Assembly (NCBI RefSeq): GCF_023055435.1
Contig: NW_025964212.1
Span: 1,922,001-1,986,000, forward strand
Reading direction: 5' to 3'
DNA length: 64,000 bases
From: Haliotis rufescens
Lineage: Eukaryota
Both the position numbers and the translations under genes were made by a program. Of this stretch, positions 1-8,766 are shown one piece after another (within the stretch, counting starts at the first letter, position 1; every line of letters starts with the position of its first letter). Below the pieces are notes generated by a model. It saw only the letters and a list, made by a program, of their open reading frames with translations. It made no database searches and was not told the origin of the DNA.

Positions 1-202
1 AAACAACAAACAAGCATAGTCGACATTTGCGGCAAGCATGGGCTGCTGAAGACATATTCTACCCCGGACCTTCACGGGTCAAAATAACATAATACCAACA
101 ATAATAACAAAGCCAACTCAACTCCTGGTCATCTTTCGCGACCACAGATTACAGTACTACAGCCACGAACAGGTACATATATGTATCCTCTGTGTGTTTC
201 AG

Positions 203-3200
203 CCGTCAGATTGTTTTGGTGCACGGGATCCCCTAGAGGTCCTTGTATCGCTAGGCGGCTACAGAACAGAACCCCCCAACACCGTCTACACAATCCTCGT
301 CAAGGAATACGGCGATGTAGGGAATGGTTGTCAGTCGACAGGACGAGTCTTCAGGGCTAGAGATAATCCAAGGTCAGTCTTATTCTACGACACAGTGCTC
401 TATTACCAGTCCAGCGCGATCGAGCAATTCCATCTAATGATATTTTTTCAGCAAATGTAAAGCTTATATTAACAACAAACATGAAGGAAGGCAATTTAAG
501 ATAGCAACACGCTATTGATGCTCCTAATATATTCTATGGCGTAGGATTGACATAAGCATTGCGTTGTGTTCAGCTTACTGTGAGTGAGTATGGCTTAACG
601 CCGCTTTTAGCAATATTCCGGCAATATCACGGCGGGGGACACCGGAAATGGGCTTCACACATTGTACCCATGTCGGGAATCGAACCCAGGTCTGCGACGA
701 GAGAACGCTTTAACCACTAAGCTACCCGACCGCCCCTTCAGCTTACAATGCCCACCATGTGCCAGTGTTGTATTGACGCATGTGTCGAAAGTGTGTTGAT
801 GTCTTGATGAATAGATTGTTTGTTTGTTGTTTGTAGTTGTTCTTGTTGTTGGTTGTTTGTTGGTTGTGTCTTTGTTTGCCTGTTGTTTGACGCCCCACTC
901 AGCAATATTTCAGCTATATGAAGGCGATAAATAATCGCGTCTGGACCAGACAGTCCAATGATTGACATCATGAGCATCTATCCACGCAATTGGGATAAAA
1001 TGACATGCATCAACCAAGTCAGCGGCTTGACCACCTGATCCGTTAGTCGTCCCTTACAAGCATGGTCGCCTTTTACGACAAGCATGGGTTGCTGAAGACC
1101 TATTCTACCCCGGATCTTCACGGGTCTATTGAACAGACTGACAGGGACGGTTTGTGAACCTTGAGTCTTCACATTAATCAAGCATCATCTGTGTTGCTGT
1201 TGATGTATAAAACTCAAACGAAGTTGGATAAAACCCGATTGTTCATATGACTATAGTTAATCTGTCATGGCTGGTAGCAGCCTTCTAATTGTGAGTGTTC
1301 TATAACTTGTTTTGGGGAGTTAATATGTGTACGGGACCGCCTTCGTGCACGTGGTCTAGTGACGCGGGCTCGAGGTCAGTATACTGTGTCTGAGTAGGGT
1401 ATTCTTGTTAAACTGCGGCATGGTATCTCAGTGTGCTAGCACTATAAATCGGCATCAGTCNNNNNNNNNNNNNNNNNNNNNNNNNNNNNNNNNNNNNNNN
1501 NNNNNNNNNNNNNNNNNNNNNNNNNNNNNNNNNNNNNNNNNNNNNNNNNNNNNNNNNNNNNNNNNNNNNNNNNNNNNNNNNNNNNNNNNNNNNNNNNNGC
1601 AATAATCTTGGATGCGACGTATATGTGTACATCTGGGGTATCAATTTGAACTATTTGCTGAACATACTCAGTAAAACTAGTAACTTATCACAGCATGAAA
1701 GGCTCTGTACGCGGATATTTGGCTCAGCAACATGGCTTACAATGCACTGCCAGTTTAACCAAATTGAATTATCAATAACTGGCATTCTTCATTGTATTTG
1801 AGTAAATCAGTGAAATCATCATCATGTTAAAAAATATTGTTGTTGATTACTGATATAGTTACAGTTTTTTCTTACTTTTTAGCCAACTTCTAGAATGCCA
1901 ATCAAACAGTTAGATATAGTTACTGATTACTTAGGCGATTACAATCAAACGTAGCAGCGTTACCAGTTATACTGTCTATATAAGAATTTCTACACGTCTC
2001 TATTTTCAGGAAAGATGGTAAACCTGTGCATGCGCGGCGTAGGAGGCGGAGAATGGCAAAGAATGTGTATGGATTTTGTAGCTCGCTTAAGAATGCCCTT
2101 CTTAATGTCGTTTTGTTACGCTGTTTGTAAGGTGATGCTTGGCGCTTTTAACCGATGCTTGCTTATGCTTGCCGCTGTTTACCGGTGCTTGCTGATACTT
2201 GCAGCTATATAACGGTACTTACCGATGCTTGCTGGTGCTTGTTTGCACGATGCTTGCTGATGCTTTTTGATTTAAAACGTTGCTTACTACATATGCATAC
2301 CGTAGCTTGCTAATGCTCGTCGCTGTTTGCCGGAAGCTTGTTGATACTTGCTGCTGTTTACCAGTGCTTCTTGATGCTTGTCGATGCATACCGTAGCTTG
2401 CTGATGCTTGCCGCTGTTCACCGGTGCTTGTTGATCCTTGCCGATGCATACCGAAGCTTGCTGGTGCTTGTCGCTGTATACAGGTGCTTGCTGATGCTTG
2501 CCGTCGTTTACCGGTGCTTGCTGATGCTTGCCGTCGTTTACCGGTGCTTGTTGATGCTAGCTGTCGTTTACCGGTGCTTGTTGATGCTTACCATAGTTTA
2601 CCGGGGCTTGTTGATGCTTGCCGCCGTTAATGGTGCTCGTTGATGCTTGCCGCTTTTTACCAGTGTTTCTTTATGCTTTACGCTTTATACCGGTGGCTGC
2701 TGATGTTGACGCTCTTTATCGCTGCTTGCCGCTGCTGGCGACCTCTCTCGCAATGCATATGCTTCATGCAAAGGAATAACGAAATATCATGCTTATCATA
2801 CCGAGTATTTAAAGTCATTCCTTCATGAATTTTCAACAAGACATTTATACTCTGTGGTGTAACAGTTTCGTTCAAAATTTATATTATAAATTATCATTAT
2901 TATGTTGTTATTGTCATTCAGTAGAACTCGTGACGTTGTCCTGCTGTAAAAGTGACGTCGATGAATTTAACCAACAGTATATGGGTATCTTTCTGAAATT
3001 TACAGCAGTTACAAAACAAGTATATATTTTAAATGAGCATCGTCATGATGACGGTATCATATAGCCTTAATTCCTACGGACTATCTTGATATAATAGTGA
3101 CAGTGTATTGCATGCCCCGTATTTCCCTACCATATACAGTAAAATACGGTTATAACGAACTCAAAGGGACCACTAATTGTAGTTCGTTATAAACGTAGTT

Positions 3201-6200
3201 CATGTTGAGCATATATACAGCATATATACAGCAAATGGCCTGGACTAAGAAATAAGTTATATCGGTCGGTTCGTTATAAGCGTGTTCGTTATAAAAGTAA
3301 TTTACTGTACATATTGTCTATACAAATGGGTTAATTCAGTTTCAATCCCTGTAACTACTATTAATGATGAACACTCAATGTCATTGAATCCCGGGATTCG
3401 AACCCACAGGCACACAGAGTCAGCCATCTAATCCACTCAGCCACCGAGGCTTCCACAAAATGAAGTCCAGATAATGTACTTTGTGTACCAATCGGACAAG
3501 CGTAAATTGGCACGGCTCCCATGGCCAAAAGTTATGAACACACAAGGTCATTTAGAAAGTGGTCAAATGTAGCAAATGTATATTTGGAATAACACTTTCT
3601 TCGTAAAGTTTGTACCCCTCTGACAATGTACACTTGTCGGAGGGATACACAAAGTATGTGATCTAGACTACCAGTTGTCGGAATTTCATTTTGATGGTAA
3701 GATGGCTGACTATATGAGCTGGCGATTAGGTGCCTCACCCTGACAGTGTGTGTTCGAATCCCGAATGGGACTAAGCTAAAAAAATACTATAATCTGTACT
3801 TCACTAAGAAAGTATTATCCTAAATATGACATTAATGATGTCAATTAAGACAAGGACATTATGAAGGTAAATGAATTATCTTTATTCCCAAGTAACTGTA
3901 TAAAATGGCTGATTTTGTTTTGTATAAATCACCCCTACATATAGTTGTTTAGTGTTTCCTTAAATGAGTTCCATGGCTAAAGTTCTGTAACTTTAAAGTT
4001 CTATATTTCCAGTTGAACAATTGGTCATATGTTAAATCGGGTCAGATCCGGTATTTAAGTAGTGATAAACCAAATGCCTCAGGGGTGTCCTAGGTCAGGA
4101 TAACACCCATGAAGATCCGAGTTGGAATCGTTCCTCAGCAACCCTCTTGTCGTAAGAGGCGACTAGCGGGATTGGGTGGTCAGGCTCGTTGACTTGGTTG
4201 ATGGATGTCATCGTTACCCAGCTCGAGGCTCATGATGTCAATCACTTGATTGTCTGGTCGAGAATCAATATTTACAGACCGCCGCCATATAGCTTGAGTG
4301 CGTTAAACTACAAACAATAGACTAGGTTAATGGCATCAGACGTGATGAACCAGATGCCTCTGAACCTACATACCATGGCCACGTCTACACTCACGTATTA
4401 GTTTTTGACGGTGGTTTTTTTCACTTCATGATTGCAAACCGCTGAAATAAGCATCAGCATCATTACTGCCATGAAGATGCGTATCCATGGGATTCCGGAG
4501 TAGAACAGATCCCCAGCATCCTGTGAATGGCGTACGACCCGTAAATGGATCCGTGGTCTGTTTCGGCAACCTGGATGCCGTTGTACAAAGCGATCTTAGC
4601 GCTGAGGGAATCGTGCTTCCCATACATTAAAATAGACTCACGACAGTCGTAGCGCTACAGCAGCTTGCGTGTCATCGTATTCCAATGGCATATTTAATAT
4701 ATGGTGTCTGACTCGGGTATTCTCAAATAGCTGGAATTGTGGATTATGAGGCGTTAAACAACACGCGAACAAACAAACATGTCTGCGATCAGTTTAATCA
4801 CCATTATATCATTTTCTTTCTAGTCCTACGGGTTTCCTGGCTACCTACAAGAATCCAACCAACCAGGCAATAAGGGCCATTAGTGCTGCCACGCTTGACG
4901 GCCAAAGTTCAATCATTGGACACACACTTGTGGTGGGTACATATTTTACTTTAATAATTTTCTTCATGACTACTGTCCTATGATTTGATTTTTGTTTGAA
5001 TTTAATTTTGGGTACTAAAAACCGTTTAATATTTTTATAATAATAATGAAATTGAGTTCAATGATAATGGTTCATATGACTGTCGAAAAAACTACAAAAT
5101 TACACTTTCCTTCTATATATCTATAAAAATCGTAAACATATCGGGGGCACGGGTGGCCCAGTCGTCTAAGGCGCCGCGATTCACTGTGCAGAGTTGCGTC
5201 CCTTGGGCACGCCAGAAACCTATGATTGTGGGTCCGAATCCCGGTTCGCCCAGATTGTGTTTCTTGGTTTGTCAGCACCATACCCGTGCTCGTGGGTTTC
5301 ACCGAAGTGGTAAACGTCTGAGACCTGCATCACTTGGGGCTTTCCTCCCACATTAAGCTGACACGCCACGATAGAACTGGAATACTGTTAAAAGCGGCGT
5401 TAAACCCAACTCACTCGCGTAAACATATCGAACACAGTTCATCACAAACAATGTTTGTTTGGTTGTTTGGTTGTTGTTCAGCGCCGCACTCAGCAATATT
5501 CCAGCTATATTAAGGCGGTCTGTAAATAATCGAGGCTGGACCAGACAATCCCATTAACATCGATCCACGCAATTGGAATACGATGACATGCATCAACCAA
5601 GTCAGGGAGTCTGGCAACCCGATCCCGTTAGTCCCCTCATGACAAGAGTGACCTCTTGGTTTGCTGAAAACCTATTCTTATCAGGATCTTCGCGGGTTCG
5701 TTTAACAATGAATACTTAGATCATATGTCATCTTTACTATCTGTTTTATATGTACTGAATACAGTGAATATTTTTGGGGGGTATTTTGTCCTCACTGAAA
5801 AAGTAACATCCCAATAGATATTCATGACCCCTAACTTTTTTTGTTCAGCATACTTGATTTTATCTTGCTCTTTGTCTTAACCTACAGGTAACTAGGGGTC
5901 CTAGCAACGACGTACTTGGATGCTGCGTGATTGGCATCTCTGATGGGTTACGATTTGCTGGCACGCCCAAATCACAGCCCGTTCGAGAAGCTCCTTTCGG
6001 CTTCGGGTCAACTTCTTCACAGCCAGTGAAGAGCAACAGTTTCTTTGAAACGCGCCATCCATTCCAAACTCATGCCGCTCAAAGTTTGCCCTTCAGTTCT
6101 CATGATGACCCTAAACCTGCGAGTCCTTCCTTCGGGTTTGACATTTCCTCTCTAGGAAACATCCATTCCCAACCATTTGGAGATCACCAGTTTGGTGGTG

Positions 6201-7684
6201 GTTTTGGGTCGAGCATTGCTGGACCGACCGGGTTGTCTCCCTCAATTTCCAACCTTAAGAAGCCCCCAACACCGCCAGCCTTCCCTGGGGGAATCCATGA
6301 CACGGATACCGGTTCCCCCCTGTTCGGACCTATTGGGGAAGATGCAAATAGAGTTAAAAATACCTTTGGTTTTGATCTCCATGACTTCACGTCACTATCC
6401 GATTCTGATAAATTTATCCCTCGCGATGGTGAGGAAACAGAAGGCCCTGGGTCTGATGGAGGAGATGCTGATCGTGGTCAGGGATATGATGGTAGAGATG
6501 CTGGTCAAGGTAACGGAGCTCGTGGAAATTATGATGAAGGTGGTGAGAGGCAGAGCGATTATGATGATGCAAGGGATGCTCAAAGATATAATCCTGCACG
6601 TAACCAAGATCGTTACGCTGAGGAAAGACCACGTGCTGCTCTTCATCAAGGCGACAACCAGGGTATATCACAAGGGAGTCCTGGTTCAGATGCTAGGAGC
6701 GATCGCGGACAAGATGAAGAATACACTAATGGTCCTGTTTCACCTCAAGCTGGAAGCTATCAACCTGAGAAACAAACAGCTGCTCCTTTAGACGATCTTA
6801 TCACTAGAGCTTCGACTGAATCCGCTGGTAGCAGTGTTAATGACCCACAGCCTAGCACTCAACAGGTTCCACAACAACCAAATGAAGCTAGCTATGCTAG
6901 AGCCACACCAGCTCATCATGCTGACCAACCATATGAAGAAGCTAATGCCAATGTCGTTCACGAACCGACACATCTTGAAAACACACCAGTGCTTCCTCGA
7001 TCTCCCAACAATAACCCAGGCCCAGTGTATGCAGCAATTGCTAAGGCTGTCGTTACAAATGCTGTCTCTCCGCCTGTTCCTCAAACTACCGATGTAACAG
7101 ATGCAACTGAATCTGTTCCTAAGAACGCCCCCGTTGTATCAGATCCGGTTCCGTTGCCAAACCCAACAATCCCAACTCCTAATGCACGTGTCATCACGGC
7201 AGACATTAATCCTGTTACCCCGTCTATCATTACAAAAGCCCCTGTACAATCAACCGGTTATCTAAACCCTGTTGGAAGCTCCCAATCTCAGACTGGATCC
7301 TACGAAGCTTCTCCATCCACAGTCCACAGGGATCAACCCACCAATGACTACTCATCCGACAGCTTCTCTCACAGAGGACACGCCGATGCCAGTCCCGTCC
7401 CAAAAGGATCTGATTCATCCTACACTGGTCCTCAGCCACAAGCAACTGCACCCCCAAATGCATTTGGAAGCAAGTCAGACTTTCACAGTAACCACTTTGA
7501 CCATCCCTCATCGTTTGGTCATGATAGAAATGCCTACGATGAAGCTCACCCTGACATCTCTCAAGACGTTGATGTCCCGAGTCAGGCATACGCTCCTGTC
7601 GAATCATCCCTCGACTCCTCTTCCCATGGAGGTGTCCCTAGGGACATTTACGATGTTCCAGCATCACAGCCCTTCCACGGCTAA
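203..7684 (+). CDS. Cu/Zn superoxide dismutase-fold protein (predicted catalytically inactive) with a long low-complexity C-terminal tail; 5'-partial, spliced
   Basis: Exons 203-372 (tttcag|CCG...CCAAG|gtcagt), probable 2010-2066, 4824-4932 (ttctag|T...CTTGTG|gtgggt), 5888-7684 (ctacag|GTA...TAA); intron phases are mutually consistent (0, 2, 2, 0). The translation contains ILVKEYGDVGNGCQSTG (cf. SOD FHVHEFGDxTNGCxSAG), LDGQSSIIGHTLV (cf. LSGxxSIIGRTLV) and VLGCCVIGI (cf. RLACGVIGI). AATAAA signals lie near 7912 and 8069. Confidence 0.85.
581..736 (-). mobile_element. tRNA-derived SINE family A (~165 bp)
   Basis: Head GGGGCGGTCGGGTAGC(C/T)TAGTGGTTAAAGCGTT...GGGTTCGATTCCC (Pol III A/B boxes), tail GGAATATTGCTAAAAGCGGCGT..(ACTC)n; many copies in the window. 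Confidence 0.8.
870..1126 (-). mobile_element. SINE-like family C (~265 bp, non-tRNA structured head)
   Basis: Consensus GACCCGTGAAGATCCGGGGTAGAATAGGTCTTCAGCAACCCATGCTTG..GTCGTAAGAGGCGACTAACGGGATC...GCTGGAATATTGCTGAGTGCGGCGTTAAAC(AAAC)n. More than 15 full or partial copies, e.g. 4105-4315, 5455-5697, 12507-12780, 15556-15778, 18436-18650, 26240-26476, 30030-30293, 33120-33388, 34165-34420, 41315-41570. Confidence 0.85.
2130..2740. repeat. 30-bp intronic minisatellite (CCGGTGCTTGCTGATGCTTGCCGTCGTTTA)n
   Basis: About 20 degenerate units; they generate the spurious RCLLMLAVVY ORFs. Confidence 0.9.
3137..3307. mobile_element. Tc1/mariner-pogo type MITE
   Basis: TA-flanked TIRs CAGTAAAATACGGTTATAACGAAC / GTTCGTTATAA..TTTACTG with internal TATAACGAAC subrepeats. 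Confidence 0.8.
5144..5417 (+). mobile_element. tRNA(Leu-like)-derived SINE family B (~275 bp) with TSD
   Basis: Head GGTGGCCCAGTCGTCTAAGGCGCC...GG(T/C)CGAATCCC, tail CTGGAATACTGTTAAAAGCGGCGTTAAA(ACTC)n; TSD CGTAAACATATCG (5131-5143 and 5418-5430). Confidence 0.85.
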
Positions 7685-8766
7685 GTCACACACCCTTACA
7701 CCACGCCTAGAAGTTTAGCGGCCGCATCCTTTATTTGAACGGTGATGTATCCAGTGACAAGGTAGCCTTTCAGTCTCACAACATTCATCTATATTGAATA
7801 ACAAACAAAGAACAAACGGAAATAATGAATGATCTTTATTTCTTTCGATGCCTGGTTACTTTCAAGTGTACGAATATTTGTGAGTAAATGTCATGTTAAT
7901 TTACCAATGGGAATAAACATATGACGCACATATATAGAATTAGAACATACAATACATGGTTCAAAGGATGAACCCGGCCAGCAGGTTATGGTTTGTAATA
8001 TGTTGCATAACTATCTTTACTGTGACATTTGTATACATCAATGTTTACAGTTTATTGTGATGTTGCAAAATAAAAAATGTGAAAATAAACTTCGGGTGTT
8101 TTGTTAAACTTGTGATACGTCATGTAAATACATGATCCGTTACCAGGATTGGGTGGTTTAATTACGTCCCTTGAAAAGAAAGTATACTCTTCAAATTTGA
8201 ATTTGACCACAAATAATAAATACAACCGTTATCAATACGCTACTGGGCTGAAAACAGCCTAAAAAACATTAAACACATTAGGCCTAAAACACTGTGACAT
8301 CAACACCAGACACATCACCATCGATTAACCGTTTCTTGTTTTTGTTTCATTTTTTAGCCACCATCAAACATGGGTGTATACTTCATTTTGCCCAGCAGTA
8401 AAAATAACAAAACATGACATGACAGATTAATTGTGGTACTATGAAAGAATCGGGTGTTCTTTAAATTCTTTTGAGTAGAATAATATTGAATATATATCAT
8501 CCACGGGAATAACGGATGCATCGTGATACAAGAAAACCAGAAACAATCTACTGACTTCAATAAACAAGTAATGTACACGTATCTGTCTGCATACGCAGCA
8601 CATAAGTGAGGAAACCAGCCCTCGTGCGAAAGAAAACAAAAACGTCCGGATGTCCGCTGGTCTTGTTTAAAAACATTTAACTTATTTTAGGATGACAGAT
8701 CGAACACCTTATTCATAAGTTAATAGAAAAATAGAACAAAATGGGTTAGTTCGCATTTTATTTGTA

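What the first reader, a model, noticed from the sequence alone, without database searches (positions are those of the whole stretch)
203..5945. Cu/Zn-SOD fold with all metal ligands and the electrostatic loop removed (pseudoenzyme)
Seen: the spliced exons give ...YTILVKEYGDVGNGCQSTGRVF...PTGFLATY...LDGQSSIIGHTLV|VTRGPSNDVLGCCVIGI. Known: SOD1 uses H46/H48/H63/H120 (Cu), H63/H71/H80/D83 (Zn) and R143, has a C57-C146 disulfide, and has introns before HVGDLG (phase 2) and after IIGRTLV (phase 0). Here both intron positions and the disulfide Cys are kept, but HxH reads LVK, HVGD reads PTGF, H120 is T, the ~16-residue electrostatic loop is deleted and R143 is V. An extra Cys (PSDC) with the CC pair resembles extracellular SOD. 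Inference: a structural or binding scaffold co-opted from SOD, comparable to SOD-derived bivalve plasma proteins (dominin, cavortin, pernin) but fused to a very long tail. The ORF track misses it entirely.
Basis: partly seen in the sequence, partly recalled or inferred. Interest (0 to 1): 0.75.

Follow-up and report, generated by a model that had tools for sequence, protein, structure and literature searches.

The report
Dead SOD-like domain with long tail
An abalone gene keeps three exons of a copper/zinc superoxide dismutase but has lost every metal-binding residue and two functional loops, and its last exon runs on into a roughly 580-residue disordered tail, so it is a non-enzymatic offshoot of an antioxidant enzyme family, of a kind already known from oysters and mussels.

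Summary
The SOD-like exons are real. Exons 203-372, 4824-4932 and the start of 5888-7684 each match Cu/Zn SOD on their own, in the right order. They sit at the same intron positions and phases as the SOD genes elsewhere in this genome, which the public name of P0001 gives as Haliotis rufescens.

- **Catalytic residues:** every alignable Cu and Zn ligand and the catalytic Arg is replaced. The stretch holding the Zn ligand H71 is deleted.
- **Loops and cysteines:** the Zn sub-loop is 8 residues shorter and the electrostatic loop 16 shorter. The disulfide Cys pair and a second Cys pair are kept.
- **Tail:** 578 residues, single copy, rich in Ser/Pro/Gly/Asp and net acidic. The Atlas model of P0001, which is mostly this tail, has low confidence, suggesting disorder.
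- **Assembly gap:** 1461-1598 lies inside an intron.
unsupported. Exon 203-372 joins 4824 directly in frame, as in the paralogs, and contig ends in one RNA-like run argue against the mini-exon.
- **Transcripts:** contigs show that 203-372 is a spliced exon and confirm the 4932/5888 junction. The 372/4824 link is inferred, not read.
- **Open points:** NCBI's model starts at another small exon (4074-4093) and omits 203-372. The first exon was not found.

I made no joined spliced model and ran no fold prediction. Verdict: a new variant of the known inactive SOD-like proteins of molluscs.

The parts
203..372 (+). E1: SOD-like exon (strands 3-4 and the disulfide sub-loop). The Cu ligands HxH read LVK, the bridging His reads V, and the Zn sub-loop is 8 residues shorter. 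It ends in a split codon AG|.
   Evidence: Translation. PDB phmmer: 2jlp E=2.6e-4. hhalign: P=3.7e-6. Alignment to paralog exon A. X3 contig record 17 lies exactly on 203-370, with 185 letters before and 30 after lying elsewhere. Single copy in the genome.
373..4823 (+). Intron between E1 and E3 (phase 2, the same as in the paralogs).
   Evidence: (very high repeat depth at 501-1500).
2010..2066 (+). It is not supported: absent from the paralog gene structure, not needed for the frame, and its GT end does not fit the contig ends at E3.
4074..4093 (+). Coding part of the alternative first exon used by NCBI model P0001 (MPQGCP + split Ser). It has an in-frame stop just upstream. If spliced in after E1 it would close the frame (read by eye).
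   Evidence: Depth in bin 3901-4100 is 6.03 in X1, 1.87 in X7 and 0 in X2 and X3.
4824..4932 (+). E3: SOD-like exon (strands 5-7). HVGD reads PTGF, and SSIIGHTLV is kept. It has the same start phase, end phase and nearly the same length (36 against 36-39 aa) as SOD exon B.
   Evidence: Single copy. Covered by the same contigs as E4 in X2 and X3.
5888..5947 (+). Head of E4: the last SOD strand (VTRGPSNDVLGCCVIGISDG). H120 is T, R143 is V, the electrostatic loop is 16 residues shorter, and the disulfide Cys plus the second Cys are kept.
   Evidence: Contigs in X2, X3 and X7 start at 5887 and carry further upstream letters that lie elsewhere. P0001 joins 4932 to 5888.
5948..7684 (+). Tail in the same exon: 578 residues plus the TAA stop at 7682-7684. 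The whole exon product is S 12%, P 12%, G 9%, D 9%, net acidic. No Pfam family and no tandem repeat. Single copy. Low-confidence Atlas model.
   Evidence: (pLDDT 0.39, pTM 0.17 for P0001).
7912..7917 (+). AATAAA polyadenylation signal. The X3 contig record 24 has 1820 letters beyond 6100, so it ends near 7920.

Best explanation
This is a lineage-restricted abalone gene that descends from the extracellular-type Cu/Zn SOD genes of the same genome (the cluster on contig C79). Three ancestral SOD exons survive at the ancestral intron positions.

The catalytic apparatus is gone. All four Cu ligands, the Zn ligands that can be aligned and the catalytic Arg are replaced. The Zn sub-loop, which held the remaining Zn ligand H71, has lost 8 residues and the electrostatic loop has lost 16. 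The parts that hold the barrel together are kept: the intramolecular disulfide pair, the GDxxNGC sub-loop, the IIGxTLVV strand and the CCVIGI strand.

The last exon no longer stops about 10 residues after CCVIG, as in the paralogs. It stays open for 578 more codons and encodes an acidic Ser/Pro/Gly-rich tail that is probably disordered.

Most likely mechanism (inferred): the productive mRNA joins a first exon not yet found to 203-372, then directly to 4824-4932, then to 5888-7684. The product would be a metal-free SOD-type beta-barrel head on a long flexible tail. The head cannot dismutate superoxide. It would serve as a stable folded, probably self-associating or binding, module for a probably secreted matrix or plasma protein, as the inactive SOD-like proteins of bivalves do.

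Shown here: SOD ancestry, loss of the ligands and loops, the exon structure, the 4932/5888 junction, and that 203-372 is a spliced exon. Inferred: the 372/4824 junction, secretion, folding and the binding role.
For: - **Per-exon similarity, collinear.** E1 aligns to columns 60-91 of EC-SOD alignment A1 (P=3.7e-6). E3 aligns to 133-145 (P=0.029), and scores 12.0 bits against an exon-B profile with 0 of 5000 shuffles and 0 of 288 intron windows as high. The E4 head aligns to 165-180 (P=7.6e-5). E1 hits human EC-SOD in PDB at E=2.6e-4.
- **Gene structure.** The E1 start (phase 0), the E1 end and E3 start (AG|N) and the E3 end and E4 start (..V|V) match genes g1, g2 and g5 on C79. The last two boundaries also match the SOD1-like gene on C445.
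- **Closest relatives.** The nearest own-genome relatives of E1 are the C79 exons, at 28-42% identity. They share the early Cys and the CC pair.
- **Ligand and loop changes:**
- **Transcripts.** X3 record 17 covers 203-370 exactly, with 185 letters before and 30 after. X2 record 16, X3 record 24 and X7 record 32 begin at 5887. The X2 and X3 contigs also cover 4881.
- **Direct E1 to E3 junction.** It is in frame (AG+T gives Ser), read. In X3 the unspliced contig ends at 4851, the E3-E4 contig carries 110 letters upstream of 5887 (108 plus 2), and the E1 contig carries 30 letters past 370. All three fit a k=31 branch where the paths into E3 share exactly 'AG'. E1 ends AAG and E2 ends TGT. In X1 the depth figure 2.8 applies both to E1 and to position 4881, which suggests one contig.
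- **Open frame.** 578 open tail codons cannot be chance. My calculation gives (61/64)^578, about 1e-12.
- **Differences between X3 and the window.** The two listed in E3 and the E4 head are synonymous. The five listed in the first tail codons change four residues.
Against: - NCBI's model P0001 (641 aa) starts at ATG 4074 and omits E1.
- No predicted protein among 1.84 billion representatives matches E1 at E<=0.001.
- The E1 contig has depth 7 against 51 for the E3-E4 contig in X3. E1 differs from the window at 7 of 168 letters, which is not clearly less than the introns at 44 of 712 (P=0.18). E1 may therefore be weakly constrained or used only in a minor isoform.
- The runs are only guessed to be RNA.
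- The 372/4824 junction was never read as letters.
- The first exon was not found in 50 kb upstream, so neither a signal peptide nor strands 1-2 are shown.
- Pfam Sod_Cu is below its cut-off on every piece.
- No fold prediction of the whole domain was made.
Confidence: 0.6

Rival explanations
1. Vestigial exons. The working product is the P0001-type protein, or another E1-less isoform, that starts at a young, possibly repeat-derived first exon. It would carry only the last 55 SOD-like residues, which cannot form a barrel, in front of the disordered tail. E1 would then be a relic that appears only in minor or non-productive transcripts.
For: - NCBI's model starts at 4074, and no predicted protein holds E1.
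- Depth over 3901-4100 is 6.03 in X1, against about 2.8 for E1.
- In X3 the E1 contig has depth 7 against 51 for E3-E4.
- E1 divergence of 7/168 is not distinguishable from the introns, while E3 plus the E4 head shows 2 listed differences in 167 (P=0.0017, a lower bound on the differences).
- The first exon was not found.
Against: - E1 is intact. It has an open frame, both splice sites, and the conserved Cys and GDxxNGC motif.
- E1 is spliced at exactly the ancestral borders in X3.
- In X3 the alternative exon region has depth 0, yet E3 still has a spliced predecessor ending in xAG with x not T, which fits E1.
- An ATG seven codons before E3, with a stop just upstream, looks like a choice of the longest ORF.
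- P0001 would lack a signal peptide although its parent family is extracellular (inference).
Confidence: 0.28
2. One reading: E1 - mini-exon 2010-2066 - E3 - E4. This would put a 19-residue poly-Arg insert in the former Zn loop.
For: The candidate has an AG acceptor with a pyrimidine tract, a GT donor, 57 nt (a multiple of 3) and no stop. The segment is single copy.
Against: - It is absent from all paralog gene structures, where exon A joins exon B directly with the same AG|N split codon.
- It is not needed for the frame.
- It resembles no SOD sequence.
- In X3 the contig ends at E3 require predecessors ending in AG, not GT.
- Depth in bin 1901-2100 is explained by a repeat at about 1853-1920, with 326 candidates in the genome.
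Confidence: 0.07
3. Chance resemblance, or a dead pseudogene fragment unrelated to any expressed protein.
For: Pfam Sod_Cu is below its cut-off on all pieces. E3 alone finds nothing in PDB.
Against: There are three independent, collinear per-exon matches at identical intron positions and phases. The exons are intact. Spliced contigs appear in several runs. The last exon has a 598-codon open frame, and P0001 is annotated from it.
Confidence: 0.02
4. Still a metalloprotein or enzyme that uses other ligands, for example the His in IIGHTLV, the Cys pair, or the many His and Asp residues of the tail.
For: One His replaces the Arg of IIGRTLV. The E4 product has 22 His and 52 Asp. Bivalve SOD-like proteins bind several metals although they are inactive (passages in PMC6530089).
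Against: None of the four Cu ligands, none of the alignable Zn ligands and not R143 is present, and both active-site loops are shortened. No known SOD chemistry works without them (established knowledge of Cu/Zn SOD, recalled).
Confidence: 0.03

Closest known systems
Extracellular-type Cu/Zn SOD paralogs of the same genome (contig C79, genes at about 26.57, 26.58, 26.59, 26.67 and 26.68 Mb)
   Same: They have the same three intron positions and phases. They share the early Cys at the exon start, the GDLSNGC sub-loop without the SOD1 intron inside it, the ILGRAIV strand, and the ACCVIG end with the CC pair. E1 is 28-40% identical to their exon A.
   Different: The paralogs keep the Cu/Zn ligands and R143, except one gene that reads HVQ. 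They have full-length Zn and electrostatic loops and stop about 8-11 residues after CCVIG. This gene has none of the ligands, loops shorter by 8 and 16 residues, and a 578-residue extension.
Dominin / cavortin (Cg-EcSOD) of oysters and pernin of the green-lipped mussel
   Same: They are mollusc extracellular Cu/Zn SOD homologues without SOD activity, used as plasma, binding or shell-matrix proteins. This rests on passages in PMC13017621, PMC9118643 and PMC6530089.
   Different: [quoted passage not shown] None is described there with total ligand loss, a shortened electrostatic loop or a long disordered C-terminal tail. Orthology was not tested. This gene is in a gastropod, and no relative with a long tail was found.
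[quoted passage not shown]
   Same: They lack the Zn site and the extended loop VII / electrostatic loop but keep the barrel and the disulfide. Some arthropod and tardigrade CSRP domains also lack Cu sites (passages in PMC13017621). This genome has a CSRP-like multi-domain open frame on C323 with a similarly short loop.
   Different: The sequence and exon structure here follow the Cu/Zn EC-SOD paralogs, not the CSRP-like gene. The motif is EYGDVGNGC and LGCCVIG, against YPVP...C and WICANI in the CSRP-like frame. The CSRP-like frame runs 715 aa without an intron. There is a single domain and no Cu site. The loop losses are therefore parallel, not inherited (inference).
CCS domain II (copper chaperone for SOD)
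   Same: It is an SOD-derived domain that lost its Cu site, is fused to other sequence, and is used for protein docking rather than catalysis (passages in PMC13017621). CCS chains are among the weak PDB hits of E1.
   Different: There is no ATX1-like domain and no CXC domain here. CCS is intracellular and ancient, whereas this gene is found only in abalone-like runs.
Human extracellular SOD (SOD3, PDB 2jlp)
   Same: It is the best solved-structure match of E1, at E=2.6e-4 over 43 residues. It is an SOD barrel with a C-terminal extension that anchors it to the matrix (title of reference 59 in PMC13017621, otherwise recalled).
   Different: SOD3 is an active Cu/Zn enzyme with a short basic tail. 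Here the metal sites are gone and the tail is about 580 residues and acidic.

Membership tests
Cu/Zn superoxide dismutase family (Pfam PF00080 Sod_Cu), as homologue | Significant match to the family profile | tested here: inconclusive
   Exon by exon, Pfam gives 12.4 bits (E=0.22, cut-off 28.9) on E1. It gives nothing on E3, on E4, or on P0001. Other tests are significant: PDB phmmer E=2.6e-4, hhalign P=3.7e-6, 0.029 and 7.6e-5, and the exon-B profile with 0 of 5288 controls as high. The joined protein was not searched.
Cu/Zn superoxide dismutase family, as homologue | Shared gene structure with undoubted family members of the same genome | tested here: met
   Three of three intron positions and phases are identical to the C79 genes. 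Two of them are also identical to the C445 SOD1-like gene.
Cu/Zn superoxide dismutase, as enzyme | Four Cu ligands (His46, 48, 63, 120 in human SOD1 numbering; the numbering is recalled) | tested here: not met
   They read L, K, V and T.
Cu/Zn superoxide dismutase, as enzyme | Zn ligands (His63, 71, 80, Asp83) and an intact Zn sub-loop | tested here: not met
   The bridging His is V. There is an 8-residue gap where the paralogs have NPFNMTHG. HVGD reads PTGF at the exon start.
Cu/Zn superoxide dismutase, as enzyme | Catalytic Arg143 and a full electrostatic loop (loop VII) | tested here: not met
   Arg is V, and there is a 16-residue gap relative to four own-genome SOD last exons.
Cu/Zn superoxide dismutase fold | Intramolecular disulfide pair (Cys57-Cys146) | tested here: met
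   Both Cys are invariant columns in the per-exon alignments. Formation of the bond is not testable here.
Cu/Zn superoxide dismutase fold | Complete eight-stranded Greek-key barrel | not tested
   The first exon (strands 1-2) was not found. The joined model was not built or folded, by instruction.
Inactive extracellular SOD-like proteins of molluscs (dominin, cavortin, pernin) | Secreted (signal peptide) | not testable with these tools
   The N-terminal exon is unknown. The X3 contig has 185 letters upstream of E1 that I could not read.
Inactive extracellular SOD-like proteins of molluscs (dominin, cavortin, pernin) | SOD homologue lacking an intact Cu site, and hence without activity | tested here: met
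   The sequence part is met. Activity itself was not assayed.
Inactive extracellular SOD-like proteins of molluscs (dominin, cavortin, pernin) | Orthology with the bivalve proteins | not tested
   No bivalve sequence was fetched. The nearest relatives found are the own-genome C79 genes.
Cu-only SOD / CSRP | Intact Cu site with loss of the Zn site and a short loop VII; tandem repeats in CSRP | tested here: not met
   The Zn site and loop VII are lost, but the Cu site is lost too and there is a single domain. The sequence follows the EC-SOD paralogs, not the CSRP-like frame on C323.
CCS (copper chaperone for SOD) | ATX1-like domain I and CXC domain III flanking the SOD-like domain | tested here: not met
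   There is no Pfam family on the 598-residue last exon or on P0001. The tail has only 2 Cys, both in CCVIG.

The most novel reading that the evidence does not exclude
The metal-free head keeps just those segments that form the subunit interface and disulfide sub-loop of Cu/Zn SODs: GDxxNGC, IIGxTLVV and CCVIGI. That these are the interface segments is recalled from SOD1 structures, not tested here. The head could therefore dock onto itself or onto the active extracellular SOD paralogs, as CCS domain II docks onto SOD1. The roughly 580-residue acidic disordered tail would then tether or concentrate them in an extracellular matrix such as shell matrix, mucus or plasma particles. That would make it a dead-enzyme adaptor that positions live enzymes, born when a last exon ran on past its old stop.
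Probability: 0.1. Interest if true: 0.7.

Novelty: new variant of a known kind. Interest (0 to 1): 0.42.

Why it matters
SOD-derived non-enzymes are an emerging theme: CCS, Cu-less CSRP domains and the oyster and mussel plasma proteins. This case is an extreme and clean one.

- Every alignable catalytic residue and both active-site loops are stripped, while the disulfide, the core strands and all three intron positions are kept.
- The parent paralogs are still present in the same genome for comparison.
- It shows how a folded enzyme domain can be recycled as the head of a long disordered protein simply by extending the last exon.
- It exposes an annotation gap. The public model omits the most SOD-like exon, and no predicted protein contains it.

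If the protein proves to be secreted into shell, mucus or haemolymph, it would extend the dominin-type story from bivalves to gastropods. It adds to a known phenomenon and does not define a new kind of system.

Tried and rejected
**Upstream first exon: not found.**
- tblastn of five SOD-like proteins and of the first exons of paralogs g1 and g2 (recognised in L040 and L039 because they are conserved between the two genes) gave nothing significant. The targets were 50 kb upstream of the window (L031, L032, L042-L044) and the window start.
- A shared 'SPTYL' at L031 7342-7395 looked like a relic of the paralogs' signal peptide, at the expected 2.6 kb distance. The DNA alignment did not support it, so I rejected it as chance.
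- Three pattern scans for ATG plus a hydrophobic stretch plus a phase-0 donor gave no convincing candidate. The best was MKVLVLLVVLAFG... 17 kb upstream, with a poor GTTAAA donor.
- The in-frame 'LCVFQ' just before 203 is the acceptor's pyrimidine tract, not coding. The X3 contig starts at 203.

**Relatives elsewhere: none.**
- The tail and P0001 residues 1-62 found only P0001 itself. Length limits of 0.55-1.75 times the query apply.
- E1 found nothing among 1.84 billion representatives at E<=0.001.
- The tail has no paralog in the genome.
- NCBIfam found nothing. The Atlas gave only weak leads, best feature score 0.77.

**Other checks.**
- Depth over 1901-2100 is not evidence for E2, because it comes from a repeat.
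- I rejected CSRP origin on sequence and exon structure.
- Supplementary tables, for example of the Haliotis laevigata shell proteome (PMC6003135), were not opened. They might list an orthologue.

Full report
**What is there.** The window is G000:C434:1922001-1986000. The only database protein matching its long exon is named 'uncharacterized protein LOC125372830 [Haliotis rufescens]' (P0001).
- 203-372 gives PSDCFG...YTILVKEYGDVGNGCQSTGRVFRARDNP.
- 4824-4932 gives PTGFLATY...LDGQSSIIGHTLV.
- 5888 onward gives VTRGPSNDVLGCCVIGISDG, then an open frame to a TAA at 7682-7684, 598 residues in all.

All borders are canonical. The assembly gap 1461-1598 lies inside the intron between 372 and 4824, so it does not affect any reading frame. 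I did not fill it, and continuity across it stays unchecked.

- E1: Pfam Sod_Cu at 12.4 bits only (E=0.22, cut-off 28.9), but in the right register, residues 26-52 on profile 28-54.
- E1 against PDB: it hits human extracellular SOD 2jlp at E=2.6e-4 over 43 residues, and 14 of the 16 listed chains are SOD, CCS or the SOD-like TIME protein.
- E1 against a four-protein EC-SOD alignment (A1): P=3.7e-6.
- E3: nothing in Pfam or PDB and only P=0.029 by hhalign.
- E3 against a profile of 11 SOD exon-B segments (7 from this genome, 4 proteins): 12.0 bits, the best of 5289 sequences. 0 of 5000 shuffles and 0 of 288 intron windows reach that score.
- E4 head: P=7.6e-5.
- NCBI's own E3+E4 protein aligns over 33 columns with a 16-column gap (P=2.5e-4), but Pfam finds nothing on it.

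The three matches fall in order on columns 60-91, 133-145 and 165-180 of the same alignment.

**Gene structure.** A six-frame Sod_Cu search of the genome found 33 exon matches, none on C434. They comprise:
- an SOD1-like gene on C445;
- clusters on C79 and C146;
- a 715-residue intron-less multi-domain frame on C323 that looks like a Cu-only SOD repeat protein.

In the C79 genes, exon A starts in phase 0 with xC..., ends ...AAAAG|gt, and joins |A CAC GTG GGT GAC. Exon B ends ...ATC GTG|gt and exon C starts ATT CAC GCC GGA. E1, E3 and E4 have exactly these three borders and phases. The last two borders also occur in the SOD1-like gene.

E1 is single copy, and its nearest relatives in the genome are the C79 exons (28-40% identity). 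They share the early Cys and the CC pair. The gene therefore descends from this extracellular-type group.

**What has changed.** In the per-exon alignments:
- H-x-H reads L-V-K.
- The bridging His reads V.
- Eight residues of the Zn sub-loop, including the His of ..THG.., are missing.
- HVGD reads PTGF.
- The His after ..IVV reads T.
- The Arg before LAC reads V.
- Sixteen residues of the electrostatic loop are missing.

Both disulfide Cys, GDxxNGC, SSIIGHTLV and CCVIGI are kept. One C79 paralogue has lost one Cu ligand (HVQ). None shows the wholesale loss seen here.

The paralogues stop 8-11 residues after CCVIG. Here the same exon runs on for 578 codons.

**The tail.** The whole exon product is S 12%, P 12%, G 9%, D 9% and net acidic. 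There is no Pfam or NCBIfam family, no tandem repeat and no paralogue in the genome. The Atlas's own model of P0001 has pLDDT 0.39 and pTM 0.17.

**Transcripts.** Four runs guessed to be RNA, from four coded organisms, were laid on 101-6100. They are Logan contigs, so they can show presence and joints only.
- X3 record 17 (383 letters, depth 7.13) lies on 203-370 exactly, with 185 letters before and 30 after that lie elsewhere. E1 is therefore a spliced internal exon.
- X2 record 16, X3 record 24 (2144 letters, depth 51) and X7 record 32 begin at 5887 and have 106, 110 and 25 more letters upstream. The X2 and X3 contigs also cover 4881. This confirms the 4932/5888 junction, as does P0001.

**The E1 to E3 link (inferred).**
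- E1 (170 nt) joined directly to E3 is in frame (AG+T gives Ser). This is the ancestral arrangement.
- In both junction cases the aligner gave letters shared by an exon end and an intron end to the downstream piece (5887 rather than 5888, and 370 rather than 372). This suggests that E1's partner lies inside the laid stretch.
- In X3 three contig ends fit one k=31 branch point. The unspliced contig, record 20, stops at 4851, which is 28 nt into E3. Record 24 carries 108+2 letters upstream of 5887. Record 17 carries 2+28 letters past 370.
- That pattern is expected if the paths into E3 share exactly 'AG' and differ at the third-last letter.
- In X3 the bin holding NCBI's exon has depth 0.
- In X1 the same depth figure, 2.8, fits E1 (0.98 x 200/70) and position 4881.
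- This reasoning assumes that Logan contigs break at graph branches. I could not read the letters.

**The mini-exon 2010-2066.** It has acceptable splice signals and is single copy. However, it is absent from every paralogue, is not needed for the frame, resembles nothing, and fails the contig-end test. The depth in its bin comes from a repeat at about 1853-1920. I regard it as unsupported.

**Evidence against a full SOD-like protein.**
- P0001 starts at ATG 4074, in a small exon (4074-4093) unique in the window, and skips E1.
- By eye, a stop lies six codons upstream of that ATG. If the exon were used from the acceptor at 4013 after E1, it would close the frame at once.
- No protein among 1.84 billion representatives matches E1 at E<=0.001.
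- E1 differs between X3 and the window at 7 of 168 letters, against 44 of 712 in intron contigs (P=0.18).
- E3 plus the E4 head shows only two listed differences, both synonymous. The first 52 tail codons show five listed differences, which change four residues.
- The list of differences is truncated, so these counts are lower bounds.
- The first exon was not found in 50 kb upstream. The paralogues' first exon codes 51-56 residues (signal peptide plus first strands), which would fit the 185 unread letters of the X3 contig.

**Comparison with what is known.**
- Passages of Peterson and Culotta 2026 (PMC13017621) describe CCS domain II (Cu site lost), Cu-only SODs and CSRP (Zn site and loop VII lost), Cu-less CSRP domains in arthropods and tardigrades, and oyster dominin (no intact Cu site, no activity).
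- Passages of PMC9118643 say that cavortin and dominin lack activity and are linked to immunity, metal handling and biomineralisation.
- Passages of PMC6530089 report dominin in shell matrix, and pernin with three inactive SOD domains.
- PMC6003135 (passages) lists a predicted SOD as a minor protein of abalone shell matrix.

An inactive mollusc SOD-like protein is therefore a known kind. What differs here is the complete removal of ligands together with both loops, in a gene that still has the EC-SOD exon structure, and the long disordered extension. My literature searches turned up no gastropod case of this sort. That is three keyword searches of open-access text, not proof of absence.

**Verdict.** The pseudoenzyme reading is the best one, at about 0.6. 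The main rival, at about 0.28, is that the SOD exons are partly vestigial and the main product lacks E1. This is a new variant of a known kind, of moderate interest.

Noticed in passing
L001 / L010 (G000:C323:906399-910706, minus strand): A 715-residue open frame without introns holds several Sod_Cu-like domains (GGYHVHLYPVP..., VVIHQSTAGAPRWICANI) with a short loop VII. It looks like a Cu-only SOD repeat protein (CSRP) of abalone.
   Followed up: partly
G000:C146:11285484-11378917 (L004, L006-L009, L017-L023, L025): A tandem array of at least five SOD-like genes spaced about 22-25 kb apart, with near-identical exon matches. Each exon-A match is flagged with one stop at its edge, which may be an intron border.
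   Followed up: no
L003 (G000:C79:26675973-26676152): One EC-SOD paralogue reads HGFHVQTYG, so one Cu ligand His is replaced by Gln. It may be a first step towards an inactive copy.
   Followed up: no
window 2133-2736: An intronic minisatellite of about 20 copies of a 30-nt unit, with 60- and 90-nt higher periods. It produces long spurious ORFs on both strands.
   Followed up: no
window 501-1500, 4101-4300, 5101-5700: tRNA-like or SINE-like repeats in the introns attract contig depths of 1e5 to 1e6 in all four runs. The left flank of the assembly gap is such a repeat.
   Followed up: partly
L043 (G000:C434:1882001-1892000, minus strand) and L042: A 355-residue open frame, and two open frames of 172 and 131 residues, that look like Tc1/mariner-type transposases, 20-40 kb upstream of the gene. 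The identification is by eye only.
   Followed up: no
window 4074-4093: The first coding exon of the public model P0001 is only 20 nt of coding sequence. An in-frame stop lies six codons upstream, and a highly repeated element starts just after its donor.
   Followed up: partly
L040 6082-6249 and L039 879-1031: The first exons of two C79 EC-SOD genes are conserved between the two genes (MSP..YLPAVL...NTNPWI..KFSS..NCVPH.GKNIH). They lie 2-3 kb upstream of exon A.
   Followed up: partly
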